A stretch of 64,000 nt of DNA, taken from sequence record MK250021.1; one strand, given 5' to 3'. Made by a program: the position numbers and the translations under genes. Positions 17,606 to 64,000 of the stretch are shown one piece after another (within the stretch, counting starts at the first letter, position 1; every line of letters starts with the position of its first letter). The notes below the pieces were generated by a model. That model was not told the DNA's origin, did no database searches, and was given only the letters and a program-made list of their open reading frames with translations.

Positions 17606-18343
17606 ATGACTAGATCTGAATTTATTGAATGGTTAAAATCAGAAATAACAATGAGTAATACTATAAATATTTCTTTATCGGACCGTGAATATGAAAGACT
17701 TGTAGATAGAGAACTAAGAATGGTTTATGAATTGGATAATGATAGCGTGCGTTATGATAAATATATAATCCCACGAGATGTATTTTATTCTCAAGAATTT
17801 AGGAAAACTAGAACTATAAAATTTCCTGATTGCGTTTTATCTGTAGTTAAATTGGAAGAGATGAAAAGGAGAAATTATATGTATGGTGTGAACGACCCAG
17901 ATCTATCATGGAACCGTATGTTTTAGACAGATATGTGGATGGGTCCGTAGATGGCGATGGACACTGTGATGTTTAGGACTATATAGTGGTCTAATTGGGA
18001 TTAGTTAAAATAGTTTAATTTAGTTGATATAAAGCATAAGTGGAATAGACTTACACATTAGTTATTTGTGATGGGACATGATCCATATAATGATGTTTAT
18101 TGTGAAGTAGCTGTAAAGGTAGATGAACAGGAATTATTTGAAGATCCTTGGGTAAGACAATGGATTGCAGCTAAATGTAAGTTATAGGTTGTGAAAAAAT
18201 TAGGAACATTTACAGTGACTGCAATTGGAGGTGTAACTGTAAATACAGGAACATATTCAGAAGAAGCAAATAATGATATAAATGATTGTAAAGAATATTG
18301 GACTAATTTACGTCAAGCAGATTTTTTCGAAACAGGTTGGTAA
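17606..18343 (+). CDS. neck/head-completion protein, T4 gp13-like (245 aa, 7 in-frame TAG=Gln)
   Basis: Frame stays open to TAA 18341 when TAG is read through; C-terminal DPWVRQWIAAKCKL(Q)VVKKLG...IGGVTVN resembles the gp13 W.....A..K.....L......GGV..N motif. Confidence 0.7.
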
Positions 18344-18379
18344 TTAAAGAATTGGTTATTAATAAGTTAAGATATGTTA

Positions 18380-18429
18380 ATAGAGAATGTAATATTTTGT
18401 AATTTATGAATATTGCATTCTCTATTTTT
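18380..18429 (+). terminator. intrinsic terminator
   Basis: ATAGAGAATGTAATATT/AATATTGCATTCTCTAT stem followed by a T-run. Confidence 0.7.
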
Positions 18430-18470
18430 ATAAAATAAATAATGTAAAATTAAGAATAATTTTAGTTAAT

Positions 18471-19895
18471 ATGGGATATAAAAGATACGGATCAAGTATA
18501 TCTATACCACAATTTGAAGAAGAAGAAGGAGAAGCAGTAAGTAGTGAATTAAGTTAGCGTTCACCTAGTAAAACTATATATTTTGGTATTAAAAAACCAA
18601 AAACTGATTCTGATTCAAATAGGTCTTGGCGAGAATTAACTAGTGCAGATTTTAATATATAGATTACAAGTGATACTACTGGATGTAGTGCAACAATAAA
18701 AAAAAATACAACTGATACTACAAATAAAACAGGTATTATTACTTATACATTATCTAAAAACTCTACGGGAAGTTAGAGACTTATAACATTTAAATATAAA
18801 GATACCGAATTATTTAAAATATTGTAGGATCCTGCGGAAGAAGATAATAATATATATGTATATTTAAGATATTGGGTATTTTTTAAAACACCTTATTCCA
18901 ATATTATAACATCAACAAATAATGATACAACTTTATATAGATTTTCATTAGGTATTGATTCAGAAGATCCTGATGCATATATAAGTTATGAAACATGGAA
19001 AGATACAGGTAATATAATATATCATGTAACTAATAATAAAGATTTAACAAGTATATTTAATGCAACGACTTCAATAAAAAAATTAGTAGATAATGGGACA
19101 TTAACATACATAGGAGGGAAAAATTTTGATAATAATACTATATCAAGTATTATAAAATTTCCAATAAAAATGTATAAAAATGAAAATACACTTGTTCCTG
19201 TTAATGATAATAGTACTGTATATATATACTATGGTGGTTTTGAAGCGACAGTTAACGCAAATGATTATGTATATAGTAATGATAGTTTACATAGTATTAT
19301 AAATTGGGGAAATGTTATAGATGGTGATGTAACATCTATTGGAAAGTATAAATATAATTCTGAAACTACTACAACATATACCGTTACATGGAATCTTAAT
19401 AGTGGAACTATAAATGGAAATACTAGTAATCCTAAATAGGTAGGAATTACATCAGGTTCAACAGTATCTTTTGTAAATTATATACCACAACGTACTGGTT
19501 ATACTTTTGAAGGATGGGCAGAAACAAGCACAGCAACTTCTGGTAAAAAAACTGGTAATTCCGAACCTATAACATCAAATAAAACATTTTATGCTATATG
19601 GAAAGTAACTACAAAAAATGTAATATTTAGTATTGGTTCTTCAACAAATTATATTACAATTACTTGGTCTGAACCAGGTTTACCCGATACATCTTTTACA
19701 ATACAAGTAAAAGATGTTACAATTAGTAGTACATATGTAGTAACTATACCAGGAAATATACAAAATAACAGTTATAAAACAAACATAGCATCTATTTCAG
19801 GTCATTCATATGGGTTAGTTAGTTGTTCACCTACAACATATAATAATGTTAATTATAGTGTATTTACTGGTTTAACATTAATAAATGGGTAGTAA
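18471..19895 (+). CDS. adhesin/tail-associated protein (474 aa, TAG=Gln) with BACON-like N-terminal region and a Listeria-Bacteroides (InlB B) repeat
   Basis: Open to TAA 19893 with TAG readthrough; YTVTWNLNSG...P.RTGYTFEGW...T..KTFYAIW matches the Flg_new/InlB-B repeat pattern. Confidence 0.7.
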
Positions 19896-20012
19896 ATATT
19901 TTAATTCGTTATTCAAATCTAATTTTGCGTAACGAATTTTTTATTTATGTATATTAATACATAGGATTTTATATGTCTGTATAGATATTGAAATAATAAA
20001 TTTCATCATTTT

Positions 20013-20705
20013 ATGTCAACATATAAAAAATATACATCATCCATAAATGCAAATATTTCTTCATCTGCTCATACAAATGAAGAATTTAAATGGTATGTAG
20101 GTTCTTCAACATAGTCTACTGTTTATTTCGGCATGGAAGATAATGATAATAACTTTACAGGTAAATTATCAAATTCATCATATACATTATCATCAGATGT
20201 ATCCGGATGTTCTGCAACAGTATCAAATATAGATTCAACAAAAACTGCAGGAATAATATATTTAAATATACCAGCAAATACAAGTACAACTAACAGAACA
20301 ATCGTATTTAAATATAATACAGTTTCATTATTTACAATAATATAGTCAGGTAGCACAACTTCTGTAATTACTATAACATTTAGTATTGGTGGTTTTTAGG
20401 GAAATAATAAAGTTATAATTCACTGGACTGGAACTAATTTTTCATCAGATGGAACTACTGTAAGTTGTGGAATTAATGATAGTACGCCGAATTCAGATGG
20501 TTCATATAATGCACAATTTACTATAACTATACCGTCAGGATATGGACAATCATATGCAACATGTGTTGGTGGATATGTATATAAAGGACATAAATATTTT
20601 TTAATTGAACCATGTACACCATCATCATATGGTAATTATAGATTTAAATGTAATACTACAGAAGTTACTTATACAGATCGTATGACGGGTACTATAACTA
20701 CGTAA
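20013..20705 (+). CDS. adhesin-like paralog 2 (230 aa, TAG=Gln)
   Basis: Shared N-domain VYFG...SD..GCSAT....T.KT..I......N.....R.I.FKY....LF.I.Q; open to TAA 20703. Confidence 0.7.
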
Positions 20706-20764
20706 AGTGAGATATTGTATTTTCTAATTGAGTGTAGATATAAAAATTATTTTTTAATATTTTT

Positions 20765-21547
20765 ATGTCAACATATTAGAAATATCCTTATAGTATACCA
20801 ACGTTTACTATTAGTACACCAGCAAGTTCAGATTTAGTTAATTCTGACGGTGAATATGTATATTTAGGATTTGAAGATGAAGACGGTAATTTTGTTGGAA
20901 ATAATTCAATATCAAGTACAACTTCATTAATAATGTCTCCAAATACTGGAGGCTCTATTATAACGTATTCAACAGATACTACAAAAACTGCATCAAGAAT
21001 ACATTATTCATTTTCATAGAATACATCTAATACTTATACTATTTCATATAATAATACAGATTTATTTAAGATTGTTACACACAGTACAAGCGCAACAAAA
21101 ACATATAATATATATTTAAGTTTAATAAATTTAAAAGATGTTAGTAGTTCTGATAACATTTCATATATATGTATATTTAAAAGCAATGTAGGTAATTTTC
21201 ATGTAACTGATATTAATAGATTTGAATTAATGCAGGTATCAGTTTATAATAATTATATATTTTTTGGATATTCTTCAGATTATACAATGATTTATGATAC
21301 TTATAATGATATGAACCTTACATATAAATCAGGAACTAATTTTAGTAAATCAACATATGGTAATTGTTATATTGTTGATATAACAAATGAAAAAGTTTAT
21401 ATAGATACAAATGGTTATACAACTGAATCTATTACATATACATCTACATATTATATCTTTAGGTATGATGCTGGATATATGCAATACGTTTCATCTTTTA
21501 ATATATATAATGATAATAATATCTATACATTAACAGTTACAACATAA
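20765..21547 (+). CDS. adhesin-like paralog 3 (260 aa, TAG=Gln)
   Basis: Starts MSTY(Q)KY, like paralog 2 MSTYKKY; related N-domain; in frame with track ORF 21230. Confidence 0.65.
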
Positions 21548-21597
21548 AAATAATATCATGAATAAATAATAAAAAGTTATTTTTTGATATTATTTAT

Positions 21598-22011
21598 ATG
21601 AAAAGACATTCTATTCCATTAAATATACTTGATGAATATGCAAAAACAATTTCATCAAAATAGGTAAAAATGCTTTATGAATCAAAATGCAATAAGAAAT
21701 NNNNNNNNNNNNNNNNNNNNNATATGAAATATCAAAATGATAAAAGTTATTCTATATATTTAAATGATTTCACTCTTGATGAAGCACATTCATCAGTAGA
21801 CAAAGCATTAGTACGTTATGTAAATAAATATAAACTTCAATTCAACAAGGTATCGGATGGAGTTTACTTCTATACACCACTTGAAGAGAATTATATTTCT
21901 TTACTTAAAAATCTTGTTCAAGATGGATTTGACATTGAACTCTTAAAGGAAAATGTAGATTCACAAAAAGCAACAGTTTATTTAGAAAAATTAAAGTTAA
22001 ATAAGAAATGA
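21598..22011 (+). CDS. hypothetical late protein(s); N gap may separate two genes
   Basis: ATG 21598 plus one TAG, in frame with track ORF 21670. Confidence 0.45.
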
Positions 22012-22715
22012 TTAAGATAAGAAGACGTAAACCTATTTTCGAGGACGATTAGAATACACAGCAATAGCAACAACCCGCAACAAATACTTAGCAACCAGCT
22101 ACATAGGTGCCAGCTGCACAACCATAGTAGAATACAACTGCTCCATAGCAACCAACAAATAATCAACAACCAAATCAAACGCAAGATTAGAATAATAATC
22201 AACAACCATATGATTAGAATAATCAACAACAATAGCAACAACCAAATCCTAATGCATAGAAAGTATAGGATACATTGAAACAAATGGAGAATACATGGTG
22301 GATGATTTCTGTTAACCTTCCTGATGAAATTCAAAAGAATATTCCTGATTTTAAACAAGGTAATCAACAAGCAGATCCAGCAATTAAAGCATGGAATGAT
22401 TTCAAACAAAATCCATCAGAAGATACATTTAAAAATTTCTTAAATGGATTTAAATCATTTGGCGGATTATCTGGTGATTAGAATGCTAATAATAATCAAC
22501 AACCATAGCAGAATAATGGAACAACAACTCAATAGCAACCTGCTAATAATACACAGCAACCTAATCAACAACCATAGCAGAATGTTAATGCAGGATTAAA
22601 AGCCGCATATTCATTCAGAAAGAATTTAATGGAAAATTTAGCTATTGCAAAATAGAAACAATATTATAATACAGTTTGTGAAGATTATTTTGATAAAAAT
22701 GAATTTACATTATAA
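22008..22715 (+). CDS. Gln/Asn/Pro-rich low-complexity protein (235 aa, TAG=Gln)
   Basis: TAG codons are interspersed among CAA/CAG in poly-Q tracts (e.g. cag caa tag caa caa); open to TAA 22713. Confidence 0.8.
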
Positions 22716-22720
22716 TTATT

Positions 22721-23482
22721 ATGAAGAAATATAAATATGTTTACAACACAAAAACTGGACATTTTATAAAGAAACTTAATGAGGATGATTCAAATGTAAA
22801 AACCGATACAAATCAAGATAATAATAACTCTAATAATTCAACGGATAGTAAAGATGATGCTTCTACTGGAAATACATCTTTTAAATCTGTTGAGTCTGAT
22901 GAAACAATTCAAGACCTTACTGCGAAAGCATAGGAAAATGAAAATAAGTTTCAACAAGACTTAAATACGCAATAGAAATTATTAGACGCAGCCAAAGCTA
23001 CTGCATCAAATAAAACACCAGCAGGACCATATGATCCTGTTATGACAGATTAGAATGTTTTGAATATCATGAAGAAAATAAATGATATGACAAAACAACA
23101 TGCAATAGATTAGGCAAATTTTCAGGATTAGAAATTAGCTTAGCTTTAGAAATTATCACAAACAAATGAATCATATTATAAAATTCCAGAGAAATATAAA
23201 TGGTTGAATGAATCAAATATTCACACAGCGAAAATCTATATGGGTAATCTTATTAAACCTGAAGAAGATGCTCCATTAAAAGGCATGGCTGATTTTAAGC
23301 GAGCGTTTAAAGATACTGACTTACTTTATGGAAAAGATAAGAACGGATACTTCGTTGTTTGTGTGGATTAGGAAGATTTTAATACTTTATATGACACTCT
23401 TGAAGAAAATTCTTATGTTAGAGACGAAATAATTGATACAGTTATGCCTTAGTTATTTGACAGACATGAAATGATCCAATAA
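22721..23482 (+). CDS. hypothetical late protein (253 aa, TAG=Gln)
   Basis: Open to TAA 23480 with TAG readthrough. Confidence 0.7.
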
Positions 23483-23506
23483 AAATAATTACATTAATAT
23501 AAATTT

Positions 23507-24286
23507 ATGCAATATATAAGAACCACAGAAGATTTAGATCAAGATTTAATTTTATATGGAACATATCTGTTATATAATCCAACGACAAATGTAACAAAGT
23601 TAAAAGTTTCAGAAAAACCTATATATATAGGATTAGATGATTTCGTTGAAGTATTAAATAGTCTTAAGAAGATTGCATCTGATTTAAAAATAGTTCCTAA
23701 TGAATATCCTGTATATCAATATATTCGTAGTAACAAATATAATGGTTCGACATGGAATATTGTTGCAGGTGTGGTTAATTCAGAGTTTAAAAAGATTGCA
23801 GATAAAGAATACTCAATGATTCCTAATATATAGAAGTTAATTCTTCCTAATAAGGAATATATTGATTTCCCACATTTTGCCGCTGTTTTCAATGGTCTCA
23901 TTAATAAGCATGGTGACCTTTGTGGATATTGTGGTGATATTGTTCAGTTCGCAAAAGATATAAAAGAAAATCCAATGGTTGAATTTCCATCTGGACATTT
24001 TGGAATCGAAGATTTAAGAACAGATATTGACGCTTATAATATATTTAAGATGAATAATAGCGATACGATAAATTCATTTAAATCTTATTATGAAAATATG
24101 TCTGATAAGAAACGATTTTCATTATTTTTAGAAGATCATCCAAATATACTTGATAGCTTTAATAATTCAACCGATAATTTTTATCTTAATATATTAAAGC
24201 AAACAACAGATAAAGATTTAACAGATGAACATATAAAATTAGCATGTTAGAAAATGCAATTATATTTAGAAAATAATAAAGGTTGA
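23507..24286 (+). CDS. hypothetical protein (259 aa, TAG=Gln), possible cell-wall-related domain
   Basis: Joins track ORFs 23507 and 23975; GDLCGYCGDIVQ...F..EDL.TD.DAYNI motif; TGA stop. Confidence 0.6.
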
Positions 24287-24311
24287 GAATAAACAAAATT
24301 CTCAACCTTTT
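24278..24311. terminator. bidirectional intrinsic terminator
   Basis: AAAGGTTGAGAAT/ATTCTCAACCTTT between convergent genes. Confidence 0.75.
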
Positions 24312-24317
24312 CTTTTA

Positions 24318-24965
24318 TTATAAGCTTTCTATATATTTCTTTATTCCTTCTACATGAATATCAATTATAGTATTCCTGCCTTCGTTACTCAATAGCCAGG
24401 AAGCATCTTCCTTGTTGTCCATAAACATATTCTCTGTTAAACATGCTGGACAATTTGTTTTACTTAATACATAGTAATTTGCTTCTTGATCAGGATCACC
24501 ATCTGAATAATCAGGTCGAAGTTTCTTTCCTAATGGTGTTAGTTTTTCTTCTGCTACTTTATATAATGCAGTTGCTAATTTATCACCTTCTGTTTGACCT
24601 TTACTTGTATATACAGACCATCCTTGTGCTTTATACCACTCACCATTTCCAGCTGCATTTACATGAATAGAAATAAAAATAGCTTTATTTCCAGATTTCT
24701 TTTCTTCTGCATATTTTGCATTAGCACGTTGAACGCGAAGACTTAAATCATGAGACTGACTTGTAATCTCTTCAACTTCAGGATGAACAATATAACATCT
24801 ATAACCTTCAGAAATTAATTTATTATAAACTTCATATCCTATTGCGCGAACATATGCATATTCTTTTAATTTAGTCTATGCATTATCAAACACCGGACTG
24901 GATTTGCCAGGTGTATTTTGTCCGTGACCCATATCAAGCATTACTAAAACTTTACTCTTTTCCAT
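24318..24965 (-). CDS. N-acetylmuramoyl-L-alanine amidase (Amidase_3), probable endolysin; one TAG at codon 30; absent from the ORF track
   Basis: MEKSKVLVMLDMGHGQNTPGKSSP...(Q)TKLKEY...LSLRVQRAN...FISIHVNAAG...GWSVYTS...YVLSKT.CPACLTENMFMDN; Zn ligands H, E, H and the catalytic E are present. Confidence 0.93.
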
Positions 24966-24967
24966 AA

Positions 24968-26431
24968 TCAATAACTTTTATCATATAATTTAAATGTATC
25001 TACTGCTAATTCTTTCAAACAATTATTACTTAAACATACTCCATCATTTCCAGCCGTAGGCGCTAAGAAATTCTTCCATTTGTCTGAAATACTCTTATTT
25101 ACCTTAATTGTTTTCCTATTGCGTTTACCTTGTTTAATTTCATCTTTACATCTCTATAAAGTAGAATTAAGATTATCATATATTTTTTGAATATCTTCCT
25201 TATCCAATATATAAACGATATAATCAATATTACTAGTTCCTATATATCTTGGAAATAATACATATTTTATATTATCATCTGATAATATATCCATTCCGCC
25301 TTTACGAGATATAGGAATTCTGAAATTATCTTCACTTGTACTCTTACGTTCAACAACAGCAAGCTCAAATTTTGCAGGATAATTTGGAACATTTGTTCTA
25401 TTAGCAATATAAAAATCTCTACTACCAATACGCCTAGATGGTTCTCTTAATGATGCATACCCAAATTTATTTTTTAATACACCCTATATTCTCTATTTTA
25501 AATGAGAAGACGGATTATTATGCCCATAATCATATCTATCTTCATTAAGTGATTTCTTCACGCTAACTGCAATGGATTCAATTAAAGATTTATATAGTTC
25601 TTTTTTATTATTCATATTTTCAGTTAACTATAATTTTGATAACATATTTATTATTCGTTTATCAATGACAGCATACTAATCTATATCATCTACCATATCT
25701 GCATTTTCTATAATAGCTTTAAAAAATTCGTTGTTAACCTTATTATACATATAAAATGGAACATTATCTATATAACATGTACTTGTATTAAACAATACAT
25801 ATTTAAATTGCTTAATTAACTATTTAAATAATTCAACCAAACATTTTTCGTTTTCAAACTAACATTGTCTAATATAAACATTATTTGCTAATTGACTTAA
25901 TCCCTAATTTACAATCTAAGGAAAATTCTAAACAAATTTTAAAGTTAATTTATCATCTGTACTAGTTATCTATCTTTTATTTGATGTCTATATAACAAAT
26001 CTTTTTCTTTTATCTTTTAATTCAAATATGATCTTATCTGTTATCATATTATATTCATTAAACAACATATTAGCAAATGGTATCGCACATGCATCATCAT
26101 CTACAATTATATCATTATTTTCATACTATGCAGGATAAACCTATATGTAATTCAAATGTGTAAATGAATCATTAAAACTGAATAAGCATGACAACATATT
26201 ATATGTATACGGTAATATATCACCTTCACGTGTTTTATACTAACCTGAACAATGCTAAGGTTCATCATCTAATATTAATAAATAATGATCCTATACAACA
26301 GGAAACTAATATCTTTCTGTACCTAATTTCTTTATTAGTAACTATCCTATTTCTATAGGTACTGTTGTTCTCATTATAGAATTTGTTAATTCAATATTAT
26401 TACCAAAATCTATGTCATTAAATAAACCCAT
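24968..26431 (-). CDS. hypothetical late protein (487 aa, many TAG=Gln); possible internal start at 25615
   Basis: No TAA/TGA in frame from ATG 26431 to TGA 24968. Confidence 0.65.
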
Positions 26432-31785: not shown

Positions 31786-32379
31786 ATGAGGATAACTACA
31801 TTAGAACAATTAAAAGAATATACCACATATACATATTTTAAAAATAATGATCCTGAATATACAAAAAAGAAAAAGGTATATATATGTCAACCTGTTAATT
31901 ATATAGATGAAGGTTTGAAACATATGGATATATGGTCTGGATATATTTTCTATAAGACTAATGCAAATTCTCGTAAAGTCGGTTTTTATGGATTTATGTT
32001 AGATATTGATAATGATCCTACATATAAAAAGAAAACGAAAGGTCAACCTGAATATATGCGAAAATTATCACCTATGTGGTATGTTAATAAAACTTTATAT
32101 AAAACACAAAGTGAAGAAAATGTTAAGTTGTTTCCAGATTTAAAATTAGAAGAAAATTTTTTAATCGAGAAAAATAAAGCTATATTTACATTAAAGAAAG
32201 AAGCAGAACAATATATAAAGGATATTAAAAACAACATTATTAAATTACCTGAGGTTGAACATATAGTTACGATGAAAACATGGTATAAAGATAAAGACGG
32301 TAATAAGATAGAAGAAACTTCTGTAAAACATTTGCCAAGTGGTAGAACTGATGTAACAAGAAAAATAGTTAAAGAATAA
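31786..32379 (+). CDS. hypothetical protein
   Basis: 197-aa ORF followed by a hairpin at 32387-32420. Confidence 0.7.
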   Translation: MRITTLEQLKEYTTYTYFKNNDPEYTKKKKVYICQPVNYIDEGLKHMDIWSGYIFYKTNANSRKVGFYGFMLDIDNDPTYKKKTKGQPEYMRKLSPMWYVNKTLYKTQSEENVKLFPDLKLEENFLIEKNKAIFTLKKEAEQYIKDIKNNIIKLPEVEHIVTMKTWYKDKDGNKIEETSVKHLPSGRTDVTRKIVKE

Positions 32380-32466
32380 TATAAATAAAAGTCTTCATAT
32401 TAGTTTATGAAGACTTTTTCTTTTTTATGACTATATAAATGTTAATTAACTATAATTTAATAATAG

Positions 32467-48155: not shown

Positions 48156-48189
48156 TTTTATAATATTTTCATAATTTAAAAATTATATG

Positions 48190-48197: not shown

Positions 48198-48226
48198 TAT
48201 TATAATAATTTAAATATAGAACTATT

Positions 48227-53970: not shown

Positions 53971-53985
53971 AATTTAAATATCATT

Positions 53986-55536
53986 TTATTTTACTGGTGT
54001 AATGAATGGTGTCTTATTAGGATGATTTGGTGTATCTACCAATATCAATTTACTTTCATTTCTTGTTACTGGTGAATACATATCCAATTTATAATTATCA
54101 CCAATTTCATATTCGTTCTCATATAATCTTATATTACACATCTATAAATTATTTCCCATGTTTTCAATAGTAAATTCATTTATAGAAAAATCAGATATAT
54201 TCCAATCAATAGTTTTATCAGTCTTAAGCACATCTCCTATAACTTTATCATCTATTTCCTTTGGTGAACTTATAACTATTCTCGTTTTATCTGGTGATAT
54301 ATCCAACATTATATAAGACCATATATCAAACTCAAAATTAACAGGTATATGTTTAGATTTATTACCGATCTATATTTGTAATTCATTCTATCTTATAAGA
54401 ACGTCAAACTATATTTTATTATCTTCATCATATCCTCTGATTAATTTATAAATATTAGTCTTATAAATTTTAAGAAACTATGAATTCTCATACCATTTTG
54501 TTAATTTTTTATTTGCTTTAGTCATATCAGATGATTTAATAGCTATACCTAATGAGTCAACACATTCATCTAACTCAACAACGATACCATTAACTTTTAT
54601 TAATGAGCCTCTTGTTATTGTTATATTATCACCTAATTCCAACTATAATGTTGTCGATACTCTGAAATACCAATAATTAGAATCTTTTGAATAATATACC
54701 AATCGAATAACCTAACTATCTAATATATAGCTTGCAAGATTAACCCAACATGAATATATAAGATGATTTCTTTCTGAATTAATTTCATATATTAAATCAT
54801 CATGATATGTAATATTCTTTGTTGCAATAGAAAAATCATAATATGCATTAGATATAAGATTTCCATTAGAACCAAATATTTGATTTGAAATAATAGATTC
54901 TATATCACAGTCTTTCTAAGGATCAACATATGTAGTATTATTATAAGATGTTTCAATAGGTGCATCAACATCTGCAACTTCTTGTGATATTGTATCTCCA
55001 AACAATTCTTCCTATGATGTTGTAAGTTCTTCTACAGAATCTCGGAATTCCTATGTTTCTTGTCTGGAAGCAGATGGACTATATTTAGATAATATGACTT
55101 TATAATATGTTGGAAGTGCTGCTATTGTATAAATTAATTCAGAAGACTATACTTCAAACAATTTGTGATATATCTATACATAAACAATATCTCCTTTCTA
55201 CGGCATTGTATTTACACCAAACATACTTTGCCATTCCTATATTGTTATATTAATTTCCAATGGCTAAACATAATTTAACCCATAAAGATCTATAGTATAT
55301 TCACCAGGATTATAATCAGCGTTAGAAACAATAACTTTAATAGTTTTAGGACATTCCAATCCAACCTATGTTAATGTATATTCCTATAAAACAACATCTT
55401 CAGAATTGATAACAGGTGTTGCTCTTGCCCACAAACAGTCAGTTCCAACAGTCTCTGTTGCTGACTGTTGGATCTCCTTAACTGTTTCATATGCTGATTT
55501 TATAATCTCATTAATATCAATTCCTAAACCTGCCAT
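53986..55536 (-). CDS. neck/head-completion protein, T4 gp14-like N-terminal domain (516 aa, TAG=Gln)
   Basis: W..MFG..TMP(Q)KGDIVYV(Q)IYHKLFEV...Y.V.L.KY resembles the gp14 P.EGDLIY....LFEI motif; open to TAA 53986. Confidence 0.65.
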
Positions 55537-57233
55537 TAGTTATTTAATGTTTCATTTATTTTTGTTTCTATCTATGATATTTCATCGCATATCTTAGATA
55601 AATCATCTATTTGTAATTTTATATTATCCCTTGTATTTTTTAATATATTAACTTGATAAGAACTCATTTGTTTTGTATTTGAATAATCTTTCTTAAATGT
55701 TGCAATATTAACCTAAATTTTCCCATATGATATTAATGAAGATTTTAAAACTTTTGAATATACACCATATAATGTCATTAAAATTTTAAATTTATCTCTA
55801 TCTGTTCTTATAACTTTCTTTATCTCAGAACATAATACCTAACCGGTTTTTGTATATGCTTGTAACTATGGTAATATTTTCTTTAAATCTTCATTAAAAT
55901 TTGAAACACCTATCATAGATCTATTCTTTGCAATTAATGCTTTATATCTCTTTATATTGTTTTCTGCTATTTTATTACAATATTCATCATCACCATATAA
56001 ATCGTTATAATCATACTCTGATAATTTAACACCATAATTAAAATATCTATTCTAATCGCCATTCGCATATGGTTTATATTTACCAAATAAATCTTTTACC
56101 CATTTATATGTCTATCTATTATCAAATGCTTCCCTCTAATCATTCTTACGTTTATTAAAACCATTTTCTGTTTTATAATCATTATAACTTTTTACTGTTG
56201 AATCCGGTAATGTATAATGTTTATCATTAGTTGATCTATATGTAGATACAACAGAACCATTAAAATCCTTATGGACTTCTTCTGGATAATAAATTATTAC
56301 ATAATCATTTAAAGAGGAACCCCAACCTGTACACTTTGATAAATTACTTGCTTTTGATGTTACAGCACCAACAGTTTTTAATTTCATTTTACCATTATGC
56401 TAATTTAAATAAAGATACTTATCAACAAAATCAATACCTACTAAATCTCGTTTATCTCCAATAAATGACATACGTGCAATAGTAGGAAATTTTAATTCAG
56501 TGCCATCATTTAAAGGCATGGCTAATGTATTTACAATAAGATTATCTTTCTTAACAGCATTTTCTATTCTATCTTTAGATATATCATCATTCAAGTACCA
56601 ACGTCTACCTGTTGTCGCAGTAACTAAAGGATTATCATTATCTATTGCAAATAGTTTTAATGTATTATTACAGCTTACAACTAATATTTCTCCTTCTTCA
56701 TTAAACCAAAAACAAAGGTTATCTTTAGATGCTTTATTTACTTTTTCTTTAAGATTTTTATCTTTTTTAATTTCCTATAATGTATATTTTTCAAAATGTT
56801 CATCAGTAAGATTAAATAAATCCATTCTATATTTTGTGAAATAACCATATGTGGCATCAGAAAATGCAATACTTGGGATCAACTATGGATCTGGTTTTAT
56901 AAATAGTTTTGTTGTATAATTTACATATTGGTTAAACAATTCCATATATTTTTTATGTAAAGCACGTTTATCATCATCTGAAACTATACCATCACCTTTA
57001 TAATAAACACTATCTTTAACTTTATTATTCCATGAATTAAATGTATTCTCTATAATAGATTTTAATTCGTTATAACACTATTTTGCTTTATAATACATTG
57101 TACCTGGATAATACATCTTATAATAAATAAACATTCCTCCTTTATCATTCAGAATATCATTAACTAATATATCAGACTAAAGTTTCTCTGTAAGATATTT
57201 TTCTGTTATATATTTCTTTAAACTAAATTGCAT
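55536..57233 (-). CDS. hypothetical late protein (565 aa, TAG=Gln)
   Basis: ATG 57233 (MQFSLKKYITEKYLTEKL(Q)S), open to TAA overlapping the next ATG (TAATG). Confidence 0.7.
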
Positions 57234-57329
57234 AATAATCCTATTTAATATTCTATTTTAATTATTTATTTTGATAATTTGATATATTGCGAAATAAATA
57301 ATAAAACCAATATTTTTATTAATACGGAT

Positions 57330-59951
57330 ATGGGTAGTTTAAATTGGAATAGTATAACAGATCAATATAAAAATCCTTTAAAAAAATACGGCAAAGATAT
57401 ATCGAATGAGAATTTGGATGATGTTATTTCAAAAATGACATCATTAACTGACTCGTCTTTATACTCATAGCAAAATAGTCCATTATATGGTGTATTTAAA
57501 AATGTGCTTGATACTTCTGCAAAGCAAGCTGATGCATTTGAACCAGGTGGATCAATAAATGATGAAATTACTAGTTACCGAGCATGGGATCCTAGGCTTC
57601 ATAGAGTGGACGGATTTGTATCTAGATCTGCGACAAGCGATGATCACCCAACAGTTGTTCCTTTCGCTTCAGAAACAGCAGCAGGAGCATTTTATGATAT
57701 GGTATTTACAATAGAAAAAGGTATCGGTGACAAAATGTCTGAAACTACTGTATATAAAGAAGGAACAAATACTAAAGATTCAAATGACAATGAAAAAACA
57801 TCATCAGATAATACGTTTTATACAGTAGATAAAAATAGTGGTGAAACTATTACAGATGTAAATAAATCAACAAAAAATTTTTATTTACCTAATAAAACAG
57901 GTAGTAATGGAGTAAATGCAGACACAATAAAAAGTTAGATTTTAAATGACGGAGATTCTTATGGTGTGGCTTCTATTGTTAATCCGTATACATTAACAAA
58001 ATTATGTGGAGGCCTTGTAAAAGTCAAAGGAAATAATGATGAAAAAGGTAATAATGCAATAGAAGTAGAAAATCACATGTATGATATTAGAGATTCCCGA
58101 AGATTTTATGGTAATGTAATTGAAGGTGAAAATAATACAGATTTTTTAACCGTTACAAATCCTACGACGACTAATATAATAACATGGAGCAATTAGGATA
58201 GATGGGGACGAACACCATATTATTTTTAGGATTTTGTTTTTTGTAAATATTGGAATATTATACCTAATAACCGTTTAATAACATTAAGAAAGTATCATGC
58301 ACCTGTATATGATAATCTTCAATTTTCAAATATGTTTGATAACAAGAAAACACATCCGTTTGCACCTATTGCTACAGTTGTAACATACTTTGGAGATGAT
58401 ACTGGCAATACATTATCATCATTATTTGGTTTTACCGCCGGTACAAAATGGAGAGAATTAAAATCAGATGTACATGATGTCCAAGGAGATTCTGGTTCAG
58501 ATCCACATGCAGTTATTGATAACATGTTCACAGGCGGTGGCGGATTTTCTACCGGTGAATCTAATATAATGCAACAAGTTATTGGTGGTGCAAATATGCT
58601 TACTGGTAAAATGTTTTCATTAGGTAAATTTGTCGGATTATTAAGTCCAAATGGATATAACATGGGTAAGGATTAGGCAGTATTTGATAAAATCTCATAG
58701 GCGAATGTGGATCCATCAGAACAAATATATGCAAATAAAATTAAAGGCCCTGTTAATAGAATTGAAACGACTAAAGCAAGAGATGCTGGTATTGTATTTG
58801 ATTAGAAATTTAGTTTAACTTGTCAATATGTAGCAAGACCTATTGGTGGTGTTAATACAAAAGCAGCAATGCTTGATATATTATCAAACTGCATGGAAAT
58901 GGCATCTGCTGATGCAGTATTTTGGGGTGGTGGATATAGATTTAATATTAAGCCTCACATGTATCCATTTAAAAATACAGCATTTAAAAATAGAATAATG
59001 GATGATTTATATGCAGGTCGTATATTTGGTAAAGATGGAGCATTATCACATACAGTAGAAGGTATAAAATCATTTGGTACAGATGCATCAGGTAATTTCT
59101 CTTGGAGTGAAATCGGTAAACATTTAAGTGAATATCTTGGTGAGACTTTAGGTGCATTAGGTGAAATGTTCAATACATTACAGAATATGGTTTTTGGTTC
59201 AGGCGGTAGTTCAATTGGAGACTGGTTAAAAGGTAAAGGAAATGATATTGGAGGCGATAGTAGCACAGCTGGTGATAACGGCGCAACAAAACTTAATAGC
59301 TTAGGTAAAAATCTTAATATGATGTGGCGATCAAAAGTTATCCAATCATCAACAATGCCATCCATTACCGGTATGCGTGCATTATTAACAGGTGAAGCAG
59401 TTGGAAACTGGCATTTAACAGTAGGTAATCCTCTAAATCCTATTATGGTAATTGGTAATCTTATCTGTACAGATATGAAAGTAGAAGTCGGAGAAGAATT
59501 AGGTCCTGATGATTTTCCAACAGAATTAAAAGTTGTATATACGTTAGAACATGGTATGCCACGTGATAAATCTGGTATACAATCTATGTTTAATAGGGGT
59601 GGTGGTCGTATATATTAGTTACCTGACTGGATTAGAGCATCTTCTGATTATGAAACAAAAGTTGATAACTATACTGGTGGAAGTAACTTCTATCAACCTT
59701 CATATATGAGTTCGTCAAAACTTATGGCAATATCTGGTGCTCATGGATACTAGACCTTTAAATATGATAAAGGTAAAACACCTGATATAAATGCACATAC
59801 ATCAAATGTTGTTATAGCTAAATTCACACCGCCTGATGTAGATGCAGCTATCAGTAATATAGTTGATAAATCTTCATCATTCTTTGGTTCTAATAATTCA
59901 TCTAGAGCATGGATTAGAGGTACAACAGCTACAAGAAAACTTATGAATTAA
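57330..59951 (+). CDS. putative baseplate / tail-tube initiator protein (873 aa, TAG=Gln)
   Basis: Joins track ORFs 57279, 57504, 57966, 58332 and 58869 in one frame; C-terminal WHLTVGNPLNP..IGNLIC..MKVE....GPDDFPTELKV resembles gp48/gp54-type domains (weak). Confidence 0.6.
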
Positions 59952-59956
59952 TTAAA

Positions 59957-60691
59957 ATGTTTGTATATACAATAGATAAAAAACCAGAAATTACAGATTC
60001 AAAAGGAAATACGATTGTTGATTTTATTAAACCATTATTTAATAATGAATCAACCGGTGTTGCAGATTATCAGATTATGCGTGTAGATGCTGAAAAATAC
60101 CAAATGCGTCCAGATCTCATATCAATGGCAATGTATGGTGATATTGATGAAGCAGAATATATATTAAAATTCTCTGGTATATCAAATCCTTTTTCATTAG
60201 ATAAAGATGATATATTAAAAATTCCTAATGATTAGGAAGTATATGGTATGATGGCGGTTAATTCACCAGATGAAGATACCACAAATACTGTAGATACTGC
60301 AGCTGAAATACGTCATAATTTTAAATATTATGATCCAGAATTAAATCCATATAATAAAGATGGTCAATCATATAGAGATTTGGAAAATAAGAAAATACCA
60401 TCTGGAATTATTGATAAAGGTAAAATTGTCAATAAAACAGGTAATATCATGGTACCATATATATCAGAAGATGGACGAACTGCAGTTACTATCCGAAATG
60501 GTAAAGTATATTTTGGTGAAGATAGTGGTTTAAATATAGCATCATCTGAAAAAATATCACAGGTCGCGAACATTACATCAACCATATAGAATGCAATAAA
60601 TAATACAATGACAAAATTATCAGATTCAAACTGTTTATATAATGGTTCGAACTTAGCAGATTTTGTAAGAACAAATTTTAATAATAACTGA
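59957..60691 (+). CDS. baseplate wedge / LysM-like protein, gp53-like (244 aa, TAG=Gln)
   Basis: RPDLIS..MYG....EYILK.SGISNPFSL..DDIL.IP motif; TGA at 60689. Confidence 0.65.
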
Positions 60692-60698
60692 TTGAAAT

Positions 60699-63600
60699 AT
60701 GAATACAAAATATCCTTTAAATGGTAGACTGGCAACATTAGCAGATTTGGTACATGAATACGGTCCAAATTCTGGATGGCCTAGTAATAAAACATATGAT
60801 CTTTTAACATTAAATGCAGATGACACATAGCCATTTTAGACTTTAATTTTTAAATCTACATTAGATTCTAATAATAAATTTTAGGCGGAAATACCATATG
60901 AAATTGTATATTTTGATGATGTATATTCTAAAAATCAAAAAGATAATAATGGGAAAAATATGAGGCTTATATAGAGAAATGACAGCTCTGTATTTTATAA
61001 TAATGAAGAATATACTACTTATGGTTAGTTAAGTCCATCATCATATATAATTGCAAATATTGTTTCAAATCCTACTAAAATTAAAAATGGTTATTTTGGA
61101 TTCAAATTTATTGGCGCTAATATAGATAAGCAATCACTCAATTATTAGCAATATTATTATAATTATAAGACATCTGATGGAGAAGCTACTGTTATGTATG
61201 CGCTTAGAAATATATTATATATATTAAAAAAGTCAAGTAAGACGAACGATAATTAGAAAAAACATTTTATTAATAGTATTTTTTCAGATTATACTGAATT
61301 AAAAAATTCAGACTATTATAAGAATGAGGAAAATAAACCTATAATGGTAGATGTTATAAAAGATATATTAGATAATACAGATAAAGAATTTTCATCATGG
61401 CAATTAGATACAGATGCATATAAATATTTAGGTGATGCTATATGGACTTCAAAACATATATATTATAAAAATTATACAAGTGAAAAAGATAGTACAAAAA
61501 ATGAATATGAACAAAATATTGTAAAAAAAGCTCGAGCTGCTAAATATTTTACTAATGCCATTGTTAAATTCAATAATTTAAATAATACTATACGTACTAT
61601 ATTAGATATTAATACTACGCAAAAAAATAACTATTATTCATATAATAGTATATTTGATGATTCATTATATAGGAGATTATTATATTTTTTTGACTTATTT
61701 TTAAATTCATAGCGTTTTTTTATAAGTTTTGTAACATCATTTAGATTTTCAAAAATTTCGAATTATTCATATTTATAGAAAGATCCAGTTTTAAGGTGTG
61801 ATTTGGGTGTAATGCAGTTATATGAATATATTATAATATAGAATGCTGTACATGATTGGCAAACAGCATTGCCCGCTGGTGAAATAACATATAATACATC
61901 TATAAATATTATTATACAATATAAAGTAAAATATAAAAATTTAACGCAACTTAGTAATATAATAACAACAACATTAGGACCTATTACATTTGATGATATT
62001 AGAAAATATAGAACACCTACTGTTAAAGATACAAATGGAAATAATGTTGAAAATGATATATGGTATGCATTAAAGACATACCCAAAGAATAGTAGTACGT
62101 TACCTAATGAAATAAATCCTAATTTACATGGTAATTCTATTACACCAGGATTATATAGTACAAATACTATTCTATATGGAACATCGTTTTTCCCAGCTTT
62201 ACCTCATAAAGATTTTGAAAATAATAATGATTATAATATTAGTAAAGTAAATTATTCATTAGGACTATTAAGATGGCCCGTTGGTGAAAACTTAACATTG
62301 TTATCATTAGATGATGTAAAGAATTCAATGAATAATCCTAATTTCATTAGTCCTATAACAAATCAAAAAAACTATGCAGATACAAGTGACGAAAATTTAT
62401 TTGGTGAAAATGATCCTAATGATATTATTAAAAAAAGTGGCATAGCTCCATTTGGTGTATTACGTATACATACTTCATTAGATACATCAGACGAAAATAA
62501 ATACGGTTCATCTATCTATTTTGATATAAAATTATATAGATGTAAAAATTATTATTATATATCTACGGAGAATGCTGATAGTGACGATGCAAATGTTTAT
62601 GCATATTTTATGCCAAAGTATACAGATACAACGCCTTATATATCATTACCAATAATTAAATTAAAAAATGATGAAGACAATAGTATAAATAATATTATCA
62701 CCGAATTAGATAAAAAATTTAAGGATGGATATATTTACTCAATACCATCTCATACAATTATTACATATTTTACAATTCAAAGTGGAACTGCAAAAACAAT
62801 AATATATGCATCTGGTAGAACTGATACTCAAAATAATCTCGGTTCTGATACATATACAAATAAAAATTAGATTACGTTCTATTATTATGTAGAAGATAGC
62901 AATGAATGGGTACAAGTAACTGGCGATTATATAAATATTAATTCAAATCCATCTGGAAATAATATAAGTAAACAATATGAAATAACTTTTAATTTATCAC
63001 AAAATTATCATCAATATTGGCGATTTACATTAAATAATATAAATTAGTATTATTATTTTAGATGTAATTATTATGATAAACCAAAAGATAACACATCATT
63101 TATAAATATGACTATACATCATCTTTTTGTATCTGATGAATCTTTAATATAGGGAATGATAGAATATCAATTAGGTATGAGAAACCAACAGGATAAATCT
63201 ACAAATCAAATATCATTAAAATATGCAGTATATAATACAATTACTGATATTAGAAATGATAATGAAAAACCTAATGATAAGTCATCATTATCAATTATAG
63301 AACATGCAATTAATAACGCTGAACAATAGAATGTTATTATATGTATTGATAAAACAATATACATAGAACCTATTGCTTTTAAATCAACAGAACGATATGT
63401 ATCAGAAAAATTTTATGGAAATATATATAGTCCGTTCCATGTAGCATATGAAACAAAATCATTTGATGGTATCTCAGAGTTTAATATACAAAAACAAATA
63501 TATGGATATAATTTTAATTCATGTGCATTATTTGATAAAACTTCAGAATCACGTGTAAAAATAGAAAAACTATATAAAAAAGAAAGTGTAAATGTATATT

Positions 63601-64000
63601 TAGCATTTGAACCTATTTATATAATTAATAATGGTAATACATTTAAAGACAATAATGCAAAAGATGAAGATATTATAAATGAGTATTCTACTTATTTTAA
63701 TACATGTTCAATAACAAATATAAAATTAAGCAATAATGGTACAGAACAAACTATTTACAAGAATTCTGGTAATTCAAACAATAATTTTATTAAAAGTATA
63801 TTTTCTAAATCTGTATATATTGACGCAACATCAATATGTATAAGTGTTACAAGTAATAAAACAGAACCAATTTCTTCACTTATATATGATACAACCGATG
63901 GTTTAATAAACGCCTATTTGTTCGATTTTGATATAAAATATTACAAATATAAAAATAATACAGAGAAATTTGAAGAAACAAATAGTGTAAATGTAACAAA
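60699..64000 (+). CDS. large late structural protein (>1100 aa, TAG=Gln), runs off the window end
   Basis: No TAA/TGA in frame from ATG 60699 to 64000; includes track ORFs 61344 and 61869. Confidence 0.7.

What the first reader, a model, noticed from the sequence alone, without database searches (positions are those of the whole stretch)
17606..64000. TAG is reassigned to Gln, but essentially only in late (structural, packaging, lysis) genes
TerL, neck-like, baseplate-like, adhesin and amidase genes are intact only if TAG is sense. The amino acid is shown directly in three places. TAG alternates with CAA/CAG in the poly-Q tracts of 22008-22715. TAG fills both Q positions of the nuclease motif IEC(Q)GK(Q)HF near 41840. 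In the 13-aa repeats a CAG (51958-60) occupies the position that is TAG in sister units. By contrast, ligase (711 aa), RF2 and the 32467-40971 block have no internal TAG. This matches the established code-15 pattern of Lak-like and some crAss-like phages, where recoding is proposed to act as a late-gene timer.
Basis: partly seen in the sequence, partly recalled or inferred. Interest (0 to 1): 0.8.

Follow-up and report, generated by a model that had tools for sequence, protein, structure and literature searches.

The report
Known Lak megaphage TAG-to-glutamine recoding
The window is a piece of the published Prevotella megaphage Lak-B2, where the stop codon TAG is read as glutamine in a conserved subset of genes (particle, packaging, lysis), as already reported; what seems new is that these genes also sit behind a T4-late-like promoter motif.

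Summary
The window is 100% identical to Prevotella phage Lak-B2 (MK250021.1, bases 248001-312000). The three N runs have exactly the length of the record, and the reading frame stays open across them.

Reading TAG as sense raises ORF coverage from 67% to 91% in the window and from 66% to 90% in the genome. TAG behaves as a Gln codon in Lak-A/C orthologue alignments and in table-11 homologues of the DUF723-family nuclease and TerL. The genome has a Gln-like tRNA(CUA), an RF2 and no GlnRS.

TAG use is bimodal: 0% or 12-79% of Gln-type codons per gene. This status is conserved gene by gene across Lak-A, B and C.

Corrections: the repeats are 14 aa, not 13. A nuclease gene also uses TAG. Elsewhere in the genome a DnaB-like helicase, a DNA polymerase piece and a gp55-like late sigma factor carry TAG, so "only late genes" is too strict.

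Not found in the Lak papers searched: TAG-free genes follow a Bacteroidetes sigma-A type motif (TAnnTTTG), while TAG-using genes follow a T4-late-like ATAAATA 20-32 nt before the start. This replicates in Lak-A2.

The parts
17606..26431 (.). First TAG-using block: 11 genes, 2-19 TAG each except two with a single TAG. Includes the poly-Q protein 22008-22715 (17 TAG), 24968-26431(-) (19 TAG, 79% of its Gln-type codons) and the amidase.
   Evidence: ATAAATA motif 24-29 nt before 17606, 18471, 21598 and 24968(-).
21701..21721 (.). N run of 21 nt inside ORF 21598-22011. Length-exact, frame continuous.
24318..24971 (-). N-acetylmuramoyl-L-alanine amidase endolysin. One TAG at codon 32, inside the homologous domain.
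   Evidence: phrog_435 E 4e-41; CwlD-like
27291..27312 (.). N run of 22 nt inside ORF 26921-28057. Length-exact, frame continuous.
27670..27705 (.). N run of 36 nt inside ORF 26921-28057. Length-exact, frame continuous.
28067..30229 (+). Large terminase, T4 gp17 type, with 21 in-frame TAG.
   Evidence: phrog_5989 E 9e-47; PDB 3ezk gp17 E 1e-35; Q at conserved TAG columns
30260..31774 (+). 504-aa gene of unknown function with 11 TAG. ATAAATA lies 21 nt upstream and is conserved in Lak-A/C.
31786..35574 (+). TAG-free block of five genes of unclear function, with no TAnnTTTG motif. A near-late motif (TATAAATG) lies about 25 nt before 32467. Timing class unresolved.
35678..35685 (+). TATCTTTG (TAnnTTTG) early-type promoter motif, 37 nt before 35723, heading the ABC-transporter genes.
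35723..40971 (+). Block with no TAG except one, 4 codons before the end of 35723-36076. Holds a substrate-binding protein fused to an OmpA-like domain (36134-37717), a permease (39140-39973) and an ABC ATPase (39982-40971).
   Evidence: The TAG-free state is conserved in Lak-A/C even at 40% aa identity.
41102..41899 (+). Two genes absent at this place in Lak-A/C: a 96-aa ORF (1 TAG) and a DUF723-family nuclease (top PHROG hit named HNH endonuclease) at 41399-41899 (4 TAG, three at near-invariant Q positions).
   Evidence: phrog_559 E 2e-38; ATAAATA 40 nt upstream
42115..49819 (+). Block with no TAG except one, 7 codons before the end of 47319-47879. TATCTTTG motifs start at 43304, 45931 and 48190.
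43909..44652 (+). Class-II tRNA gene (ARAGORN with introns: Leu, GAG) split by a 649-nt intron with a group-I-like core at 44055-44229. Lies just upstream of RF2.
   Evidence: (RF00028, 40.5 bits, below gathering 50, E 1.4e-8)
44737..45873 (+). Release factor 2. One ORF with no frameshift, GGQ present, SPY in place of SPF, no TAG.
   Evidence: TIGR00020 403 bits, above the 370 cut-off; E. coli RF2 263 bits against RF1 150
49873..57233 (-). TAG-using minus-strand operon of three genes (23, 17 and 12 TAG). ATAAATA lies 29 nt before 55536-57233(-). 14-aa repeats lie at 51573-52161.
57279..64000 (+). TAG-using plus-strand genes (9, 3 and 14 TAG), the last running off the window. Weak sheath-like hit in 59909-60691.
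9464..11599 (-). NAD-dependent DNA ligase, 711 aa, no TAG. Control outside the stated span.
   Evidence: phrog_3869 E 6e-87
3451..3786 (-). Small membrane-protein gene in the otherwise TAG-free early region. One TAG at codon 22, where orthologues have AAA. ATAAATA lies 52 nt upstream.

Best explanation
The window is bases 248001-312000 of Prevotella phage Lak-B2. In this phage TAG is a glutamine codon (genetic code 15).

Decoding machinery. TAG is read by a phage-encoded tRNA with anticodon CUA. That tRNA resembles the phage's own tRNA-Gln and is presumably charged by the host GlnRS, as the E. coli supE tRNA is (inferred). A phage RF2 can end every phage gene, because all stops are TAA or TGA.

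Two gene classes. TAG is used in a conserved class of genes: 168 of 579 genome-wide have two or more TAG. In those genes it makes up a third to four fifths of Gln-type codons. It is selected against in the rest.

Link to transcription. The two classes largely coincide with two upstream motif classes.
- TAG-free genes often follow a Bacteroidetes sigma-A type -7 box (TAnnTTTG, here TATCTTTG). They should therefore be readable by the unmodified host.
- TAG-using genes follow a T4-late-like ATAAATA box 20-32 nt before the start codon.

What is shown and what is inferred. The sense reading, the Gln identity, the bimodality and its conservation, the tRNA, the RF2 and the motif association are shown. 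It is inferred that the motifs are promoters, that TAG-free means early and TAG-using means late, and that recoding delays or locks late-gene translation (the published hypothesis).
For: - Identity with Lak-B2.
- ORF coverage 67% to 91% in the window and 66% to 90% in the genome.
- Gln identity.
- tRNA(CUA) with a clean cloverleaf, closest (73%) to the phage tRNA-Gln(CUG).
- No GlnRS in the genome.
- RF2. All 579 called genes end in TAA (507) or TGA (72).
- Bimodal TAG use.
- Conservation and selection. In TAG-using genes 21 of 110 window CAA/CAG align to TAG in Lak-C1. In TAG-free genes the figure is 1 of 206, at the same 40% non-synonymous change (Fisher p 1e-9).
- Functions. TAG-using: TerL, amidase, portal, sheath, baseplate wedge. 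TAG-free: ligase, RF2, topoisomerase II, NAMPT, DHFR-TS, homing endonucleases, ABC transporter..
- Motifs. ATAAATA precedes 57 of 100 TAG-using genes against 18 of 163 TAG-free genes (p 2e-15). TAnnTTTG precedes 1 of 100 against 36 of 163 (p 2e-7). Replicated in Lak-A2 (p 2e-19 and 2e-7). Conserved before window orthologues.
- Consensus sequences taken from PMC7366714 and PMC1524935.
- Published for these genomes: PMC6784885, PMC8346664 and preprint 10.1101/2021.08.26.457843.
Against: - There is no protein-level evidence for Gln at TAG in Lak, and no time-resolved expression. The RNA runs found hold at most 7% of the sampled words and are kept only as contigs.
- Most TAG-rich window genes have no recognisable function.
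- TAG also occurs in the nuclease, a DnaB-like helicase, a DNA polymerase piece and the late sigma factor.
- The major-head-like gene has only one TAG, at codon 11.
- 40% of TAG-using operon heads lack the ATAAATA box, and two thirds of TAG-free ones lack TAnnTTTG.
- Block 31786-35574 is TAG-free without an early motif.
- No promoter motif was found near the tRNA(CUA), so when it is made is unknown.
- 34 of 46 single-TAG genes have the TAG in the first 30 codons. This is probably start-codon over-extension by my ORF caller, so only the class with two or more TAG is robust.
Confidence: 0.88

Rival explanations
1. TAG is still a stop. The TAG-rich genes are then pseudogenes, or are made by occasional read-through.
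For: Table 11 gives many ORFs of 90-330 aa inside these genes. The host is expected to use the standard code.
Against: - 115 or more TAG lie inside long single frames whose orthologues stay open in Lak-A and Lak-C at 36-88% aa identity.
- TAG sits at near-invariant Q positions of essential motifs in TerL and the nuclease.
- TAG is up to 79% of Gln-type codons in a gene.
- A tRNA(CUA) is encoded in the genome.
Confidence: 0.01
2. TAG is sense but stands for another residue (Lys, Glu, Tyr, Leu or Ser).
For: - Lys and Glu are the next most common partners of TAG.
- ATG replaces TAG in six repeat units.
- Some TerL TAG columns are Y, N or E in homologues.
Against: - Gln leads by about 100 log-likelihood units.
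- The TAG:TAG plus TAG:Q share (0.61-0.63) equals the self-conservation of Q (0.57-0.58).
- The K/E/N/D partners are the same ones CAA/CAG show.
- The tRNA(CUA) is class I and closest to tRNA-Gln.
Confidence: 0.03
3. TAG-free genes lack TAG because they were acquired recently from standard-code donors, not because of timing.
For: The TAG-free set includes host-like genes (ABC transporter, RF2, NAMPT, DHFR-TS) and mobile homing endonucleases.
Against: - The TAG-free state is shared by orthologues in Lak-A, B and C, even for genes only 38-50% identical.
- The CAA/CAG-to-TAG exchange is about 40 times rarer than in TAG-using genes at equal divergence.
- GC3 of these genes (0.07-0.25) matches the rest of the phage.
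- The one clearly recent insertion, the nuclease gene, does use TAG.
Confidence: 0.05
4. TAG use follows tolerated translation cost rather than timing. Genes needing very high or very reliable output avoid TAG because suppression competes with host RF1.
For: The major-head-like gene has 1 TAG against 26 CAA/CAG. RF2 and the early genes have none.
Against: - Abundant virion proteins such as sheath (8 TAG) and portal (14 TAG) use TAG freely.
- TAG class follows the promoter motif class.
- This may be a second factor rather than a true rival.
Confidence: 0.15

Closest known systems
Lak megaphages, code 15 (Devoto et al. 2019, PMC6784885; Crisci et al. 2021, PMC8346664)
   Same: It is the same genome. 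Those papers report TAG read as Q, large TAG-free regions, structural genes in TAG regions, a tRNA with anticodon CTA, a further tRNA for TAA, and RF2 in every genome.
   Different: Nothing differs for the finding as given. Promoter motifs and a gp55-like sigma factor are not mentioned in the Lak papers held in the library.
Recoding as a regulator of late and lysis genes (Borges et al., preprint 10.1101/2021.08.26.457843)
   Same: Early genes are compatible with the standard code. Structural and lysis genes are recoded. Code-change factors (suppressor tRNA, RF) are proposed to be made first. Lak is listed with several recoded modules spread over the genome.
   Different: That paper notes that in Lak the DNA replication genes are mostly in alternative code. 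This agrees with TAG in the helicase and polymerase here, and it weakens 'late only'.
crAss-like phages using code 15, with proteomic proof (Peters et al. 2022, PMC9523058)
   Same: TAG read as Gln in gut phages of Bacteroidetes (abstract).
   Different: A different phage order. Peptide evidence exists for them and not for Lak.
T4 late transcription: gp55 sigma factor and the TATAAATA box (PMC1524935)
   Same: T4-type TerL. A gp55-like protein (phrog_234, 29% identical to T4 gp55). An ATAAATA box at a fixed short distance before late-type genes.
   Different: No gp45 homologue was found with phrog_223, and gp33 was not searched. No transcription starts are mapped. The sigma gene itself contains three TAG codons.
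E. coli supE (glnV44) amber suppressor (my own knowledge)
   Same: A tRNA-Gln-like body with anticodon CUA. It keeps U35, the main GlnRS anticodon determinant.
   Different: Here the tRNA is phage-encoded and serves hundreds of codons. Charging by the host GlnRS is inferred, not shown.

Membership tests
Code 15 (TAG=Gln) Lak phage | Near-identity to a published Lak genome | tested here: met
   100% identity over 19.9 kb and 12.5 kb to MK250021.1
Code 15 (TAG=Gln) Lak phage | Reading TAG as sense restores long conserved ORFs | tested here: met
   Coverage 67% to 91% in the window and 66% to 90% in the genome. Orthologues stay open in Lak-A/C.
Code 15 (TAG=Gln) Lak phage | TAG aligns with Gln in homologues | tested here: met
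Code 15 (TAG=Gln) Lak phage | Suppressor tRNA with anticodon CUA | tested here: met
   Record 415547-415618, 61.7 bits against RF00005, ARAGORN anticodon cta. It lies outside the window; the window itself yields no tRNA by default ARAGORN.
Code 15 (TAG=Gln) Lak phage | RF2 encoded, and TAG not needed as a stop | tested here: met
   prfB above the curated cut-off. Stops are 507 TAA and 72 TGA.
Code 15 (TAG=Gln) Lak phage | Gln found at TAG positions in peptides | not testable with these tools
   No proteome data are at hand.
Late-gene-restricted recoding model | TAG use is bimodal among genes and conserved | tested here: met
Late-gene-restricted recoding model | TAG-using genes are structural, packaging or lysis genes | tested here: inconclusive
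   True for all nameable virion and lysis genes. Most TAG-rich genes are unnamed. The nuclease, helicase, DNA polymerase piece and sigma factor also carry TAG.
Late-gene-restricted recoding model | Code-change factors are readable in the standard code | tested here: met
   RF2 has no TAG. It lies in a TAG-free block, about 1.4 kb downstream of an early-type motif starting at 43304.
Late-gene-restricted recoding model | TAG-free genes are expressed before TAG-using genes | not testable with these tools
   Only a proxy is available: two promoter-motif classes. The RNA runs were unusable.
T4-type late transcription | gp55-family sigma factor | tested here: met
   phrog_234 E 6e-10. BLASTP against T4 gp55 E 3e-7, 29% identity.
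T4-type late transcription | TATAAATA-like box before late genes | tested here: met
   ATAAATA 20-32 nt before start codons of TAG-using genes
T4-type late transcription | gp45 clamp and gp33 co-activator | tested here: inconclusive
   phrog_223 gave no match, but the control rang nowhere either. gp33 was not searched.

The most novel reading that the evidence does not exclude
In Lak phages the genetic-code switch and the transcription switch may be wired in series. TAG-free genes carry host-type (TAnnTTTG) promoters and TAG-using genes carry T4-late-like (ATAAATA) promoters. The gp55-like late sigma factor itself needs three conserved TAG codons (20, 33 and 46 of 128) to be read. Late transcription could then start only after the tRNA(CUA) is working. 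On this reading, recoding would be the trigger of the late programme rather than a parallel brake on it. I found no mention of promoters or of gp55 in the Lak and recoding papers held in the library.
Probability: 0.3. Interest if true: 0.6.

Novelty: already known. Interest (0 to 1): 0.25.

Why it matters
The finding itself adds nothing new. Code 15, TAG-free regions, the CUA tRNA and RF2 were all described for these very genomes in 2019-2022.

Its practical value is as a check. A reader working from raw sequence recovered a true recoding and the right amino acid. Such windows must be annotated with table 15, or two thirds of the late genes are fragmented.

The added observations turn the untested 'late-gene timer' idea into something concrete for an uncultivated phage. 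These observations are the two promoter-motif classes that follow the code classes in two Lak lineages, and a late sigma factor gene that itself contains conserved TAG codons. They predict specific transcription starts and a specific dependency: no suppressor tRNA means no late sigma factor. Both can be tested with metatranscriptomes or in a Bacteroides or E. coli reporter system.

Tried and rejected
- PHROG and NCBIfam scans named few TAG-rich window genes.
I therefore sent these proteins to no fold or atlas tool.
- T4 gp17 is too distant to inform TAG columns; it has L, R and K at three of them.
- Many TerL homologues in the protein database are themselves translated with TAG=Q (for example P0193). 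I therefore relied on a table-11 homologue (P0236) and on codon alignments.
- GlnRS (TIGR00440), DnaE (TIGR00594), phrog_12791 and the gp45 clamp (phrog_223) gave no match in Lak-B2.
- Rfam at gathering threshold found nothing in the window.
- No whole genome is held for the window. I rebuilt Lak-B2 from record loci plus the window, so the masked letters were never fetched.
- RNA runs hold at most 7% of the sampled words and are contigs only.
- No promoter motif was found near the tRNA(CUA).
- Reading TAA as sense also raises coverage (94%). But it gives 229 overlapping ORFs, and TAA is the main stop, so I rejected this as an artefact of 26% GC.
- The 5' bias of TAG is weak (mean relative position 0.465 against 0.504, p 8e-4) and not significant in the window alone.

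Full report
WHAT THE WINDOW IS

A 19.9-kb and a 12.5-kb stretch of the window are 100% identical to Prevotella phage Lak-B2. That record is MK250021.1, from baboon faeces, 549,839 bp and circular. They are 99.0-99.7% identical to the other eight Lak-B genomes. Window base 1 is record base 248001. No whole genome is held for the window. I therefore rebuilt the record from loci on both sides plus the window itself, and the masked letters were never fetched.

THE GAPS

Window 21000-28100 holds the three N runs of the finding. It maps to exactly 7101 bases in Lak-B2 and in five sister genomes. The N runs are therefore length-exact. On both sides of every run, only the frame of the spanning ORF is free of TAA and TGA. 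The other two frames hold 3 to 21 stops. ORFs 21598-22011 and 26921-28057 are thus continuous and in frame. Their three TAG codons lie outside the N runs.

THE OBSERVATION

The window is 26% GC.
- With table 11, stop-to-stop ORFs of at least 100 aa cover 67% of it. With TAG read as sense they cover 91%, and the longest ORF grows from 712 to 1366 aa.
- For the whole genome, a greedy ORF set covers 66% with table 11 and 90% with TAG as sense.
- In 17606-64000 there are 188 in-frame TAG and 355 CAA/CAG.

TAG use is bimodal. Among genes with at least eight Gln-type codons the TAG share is either zero or 12-79% (chi-square 106, 19 df, p 5e-14). The 21 TAG-free genes of the span hold 139 CAA/CAG, which under the pooled share has probability 2e-26. 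Off-frame TAG is equally frequent in both classes, at 37 and 41 per 1000 codons. The pattern therefore concerns the codon, not the trinucleotide.

- Poly-Q protein with 17 TAG.
- Nuclease motif with two TAG.
- CAG at 51958-51960 where seven sister units have TAG.
- No TAG in the ligase or RF2, and none in 32467-40971 apart from one four codons before the end of 35723-36076.

There is one correction. The repeats are 14 aa (42 nt), and six alternate units carry ATG at that place.

WHICH AMINO ACID

I aligned 50-52 window genes codon by codon with their orthologues in Lak-C1 and Lak-A2, with TAG masked as X.
- Window TAG pairs with TAG 49-51 times, with CAA/CAG 16 times, and with no other single codon more than 6 times.
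- The reverse direction gives 20-22 CAA/CAG.
- Using the substitution table from the same alignments, Gln is the best assignment by about 100 log-likelihood units over Lys.
- The share of TAG columns that are TAG or Q in the partner (0.61-0.63) equals the self-conservation of Q (0.57-0.58).

In 119 homologues of the DUF723-family nuclease, three of the four TAG columns are Q in 110 of 119, 71 of 85 and 77 of 97 sequences. A homologue whose gene translates by table 11 has CAA at all three.

In 72 distant TerL homologues, 35% of residues at TAG columns are Q against a 4.4% background. Part of these proteins were themselves translated with TAG=Q. A table-11 TerL has CAG at four of the most conserved columns.

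THE MACHINERY

The window holds no tRNA by default ARAGORN. Lak-B2 has 34 tRNA matches. Among them:
- one with anticodon CUA at record 415547-415618;
- one with anticodon UUA at record 346127-346198;
- tRNA-Gln with anticodons UUG and CUG.

The CUA tRNA folds into a clean cloverleaf. It is closest to the phage tRNA-Gln(CUG) at 73% identity, with the next best at 68%. It shares the U1-A72, G2-C71, G3-C70 acceptor end and A73 with both tRNA-Gln genes (read).

No GlnRS is encoded. Charging by the host enzyme is therefore inferred, by analogy with E. coli supE (my own knowledge).

Gene 44737-45873 is RF2. It scores 403 bits against TIGR00020 (cut-off 370), and 263 bits against E. coli RF2 compared with 150 against RF1. 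It is one ORF without the usual frameshift. It has GGQ, and SPY where RF2 has SPF. SPY is present in 119 of 120 Lak RF2 clusters.

All 579 called genes end in TAA (507) or TGA (72), both read by RF2.

IS THE SPLIT SELECTED

The TAG-free or TAG-using state of every window gene is the same in Lak-C1 and Lak-A2. This includes genes only 38-50% identical.

In TAG-using genes 21 of 110 aligned window CAA/CAG are TAG in Lak-C1. In TAG-free genes the figure is 1 of 206. Both classes show the same 40% non-synonymous change at these codons (Fisher p 1e-9; Lak-A2 p 3e-8). The single exception is the second-to-last codon of a 91-aa gene.

GC3 of the TAG-free genes matches the rest of the phage. TAG is thus kept out of one gene class by selection, not by lack of time.

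The lone TAGs of 35723-36076 and 47319-47879 lie 4 and 7 codons before the end, where either reading is harmless.

WHICH GENES

Nameable TAG-using genes:
- TerL and the amidase in the window;
- portal (14 TAG), tail sheath (8) and baseplate wedge (13) elsewhere.

Nameable TAG-free genes:
- ligase, RF2 and an ABC-transporter set in the window;
- topoisomerase II subunits, homing endonucleases, NAMPT, DHFR-thymidylate synthase and a nucleotidyltransferase elsewhere.

Exceptions:
- The DUF723-family nuclease 41399-41899 has 4 TAG. Together with its 96-aa neighbour it is missing at this place in Lak-A/C.
- A DnaB-like helicase has TAG at codons 35, 61 and 143, inside the aligned part.
- A T4-type DNA polymerase piece has TAG at codons 7 and 185.
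- The major-head-like gene has a single TAG at codon 11.

Borges et al. already note that Lak replication genes are mostly in alternative code.

One caveat applies to my counts. 34 of 46 single-TAG genes have the TAG in the first 30 codons. This is probably because my ORF caller takes the most upstream start. Only the class with two or more TAG (168 genes) is robust.

TWO UPSTREAM MOTIFS (NOT PART OF THE FINDING)

I ran a k-mer comparison of the regions upstream of genes with an intergenic gap, 92 TAG-using against 159 TAG-free. It gave two motifs.
- TGTATCTTTGTA, preceded by a T run, lies 19-53 nt before 36 TAG-free genes and before no TAG-using gene. Its core TATCTTTG fits TAnnTTTG, the -7 consensus of the primary sigma factor of Bacteroidetes (PMC7366714).
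- ATAAATA, usually preceded by A, lies mostly 20-32 nt before the start of 63 of the 92 TAG-using genes. The T4 late promoter is TATAAATA, read by gp55 (PMC1524935).

With positional windows the counts are as follows.
- ATAAATA alone: 57 of 100 TAG-using genes against 18 of 163 TAG-free genes (p 2e-15).
- TAnnTTTG alone: 1 of 100 against 36 of 163 (p 2e-7).

Lak-A2 gives 57 of 93 against 11 of 146 (p 2e-19), and 2 of 93 against 38 of 146 (p 2e-7). For that fetch I left out the stretch homologous to the masked part of the window.

In the window, the early-type box starts at 7767, 11683, 35678, 43304, 45931 and 48190. The late-type box stands before 17606, 18471, 21598, 24968(-), TerL, 30260, 41399, 55536(-) and the small membrane-protein gene 3451-3786(-). 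All those in the parts compared with Lak-C1 and Lak-A2 (window 1-12488 and 28067 onwards) are conserved before the orthologues there.

Lak-B2 encodes a gp55-like protein of 128 aa at record 405724-406110 (phrog_234 E 6e-10; 29% identical to T4 gp55). Its gene has TAG at codons 20, 33 and 46, and these are conserved in all Lak-B genomes, Lak-C1 and Lak-A2.

The Lak and recoding papers held in the library do not mention promoters, gp55 or a late sigma factor.

HOW IT MOST LIKELY WORKS

Shown:
- TAG is a Gln codon.
- It is used in a conserved gene class.
- A Gln-like tRNA(CUA) and an RF2 are encoded.
- All stops are readable by RF2.
- The code classes follow two upstream motif classes.

Inferred:
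- Host RNA polymerase with its own sigma factor first transcribes TAG-free genes, which the unmodified host ribosome can read.
- Once the tRNA(CUA) has accumulated, TAG-containing genes become translatable. Among them is the gp55-like sigma factor.
- That sigma factor then turns on the ATAAATA promoters of particle, packaging and lysis genes.

When the tRNA itself is made is unknown, because no motif lies near it. Block 31786-35574 is TAG-free without an early motif. It has a TATAAATG about 25 nt before 32467, so it does not fit neatly.

COMPARISON AND VERDICT

Code 15 in Lak, the TAG-free regions, structural genes in TAG regions, the CUA tRNA, the extra UAA-reading tRNA and RF2 are all published for these genomes. 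The finding is therefore correct and already known. The promoter and sigma factor observations may be new. They rest on sequence statistics in two related genomes, without any transcript data.

Noticed in passing
window starts 7767, 11683, 35678, 43304, 45931, 48190 (TATCTTTG); 17574, 18434, 21561, 26447(-), 30231, 41351, 57263(-), 3839(-) (AATAAATA): Two upstream motif classes follow the code classes. A Bacteroidetes sigma-A type box (TAnnTTTG) precedes TAG-free genes, and a T4-late-like ATAAATA box lies 20-32 nt before TAG-using genes. Genome-wide Fisher p is 2e-7 and 2e-15. The result replicates in Lak-A2 and is conserved before orthologues.
   Followed up: yes
L056:13724-14110 (+) = Lak-B2 record 405724-406110: A gp55-like late sigma factor of 128 aa has three in-frame TAG (codons 20, 33, 46), conserved in Lak-A, B and C. 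The protein is at least 98% conserved apart from these. Its synthesis would depend on TAG suppression.
   Followed up: yes
window 43909-44652 (+): The 1-kb 'empty' spacer before RF2 is a class-II tRNA gene (ARAGORN with introns: Leu, GAG), split in the anticodon loop by a 649-nt intron. The intron has a group-I-like core at 44055-44229 (40.5 bits, below the gathering score, E 1.4e-8). The exact splice sites, and so the anticodon, are not certain. Default ARAGORN and Rfam at gathering threshold miss it.
   Followed up: partly
L016:1501-1573 (+) = record 346127-346198: A tRNA with anticodon UUA, which would read TAA, although TAA ends 507 of 579 genes. Crisci et al. report such a tRNA in 51 of 51 Lak genomes, without evidence that TAA is recoded. 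Its role is unexplained.
   Followed up: no
window 44737-45873: The phage RF2 has SPY where RF2 has its codon-recognition tripeptide SPF. SPY is kept in 119 of 120 Lak RF2 clusters. There is no programmed frameshift.
   Followed up: partly
window 41102-41899: The DUF723-family nuclease gene and a 96-aa ORF have no orthologue at this place in Lak-A2 or Lak-C1. This is probably a mobile insertion in the Lak-B lineage. It uses TAG at conserved Q positions and has an ATAAATA box.
   Followed up: partly
window 35678-40971: A phage-borne ABC-transporter set sits behind an early-type motif: a substrate-binding protein fused to an OmpA-like peptidoglycan-binding domain, a permease and an ATPase. It has no TAG apart from one 4 codons before the end of the first small gene, and its GC3 matches the phage.
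   Followed up: no
Lak-B2 record 54796-56799 (-), L041:14799-16799: The major-head-like gene (phrog_138) has 26 CAA/CAG and a single TAG at codon 11. An ATAAATA-containing box lies about 52 nt upstream. This could be a one-codon gate or a mis-called start.
   Followed up: partly
Lak-B2 record 510655-512205 (-) and 522024-522836 (-): The T4-type DNA polymerase is in at least two separate pieces about 10 kb apart. By eye only, the second piece continues after its DTDS motif into what looks like an intein-like (Hint) sequence.
   Followed up: no
whole Lak-B2 genome: TAG codons lie slightly nearer the 5' end of genes than CAA/CAG in the same genes. Mean relative position is 0.465 against 0.504. 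The TAG share falls from 52% in the first tenth to 38% in the last (p 8e-4). This is not significant in the window alone.
   Followed up: partly
window 12489-17357: Seven further N runs (22 to 695 nt) lie in the TAG-free region before the finding. ORFs called across them (for example 15305-16093) are mostly N and were left out of all counts.
   Followed up: no
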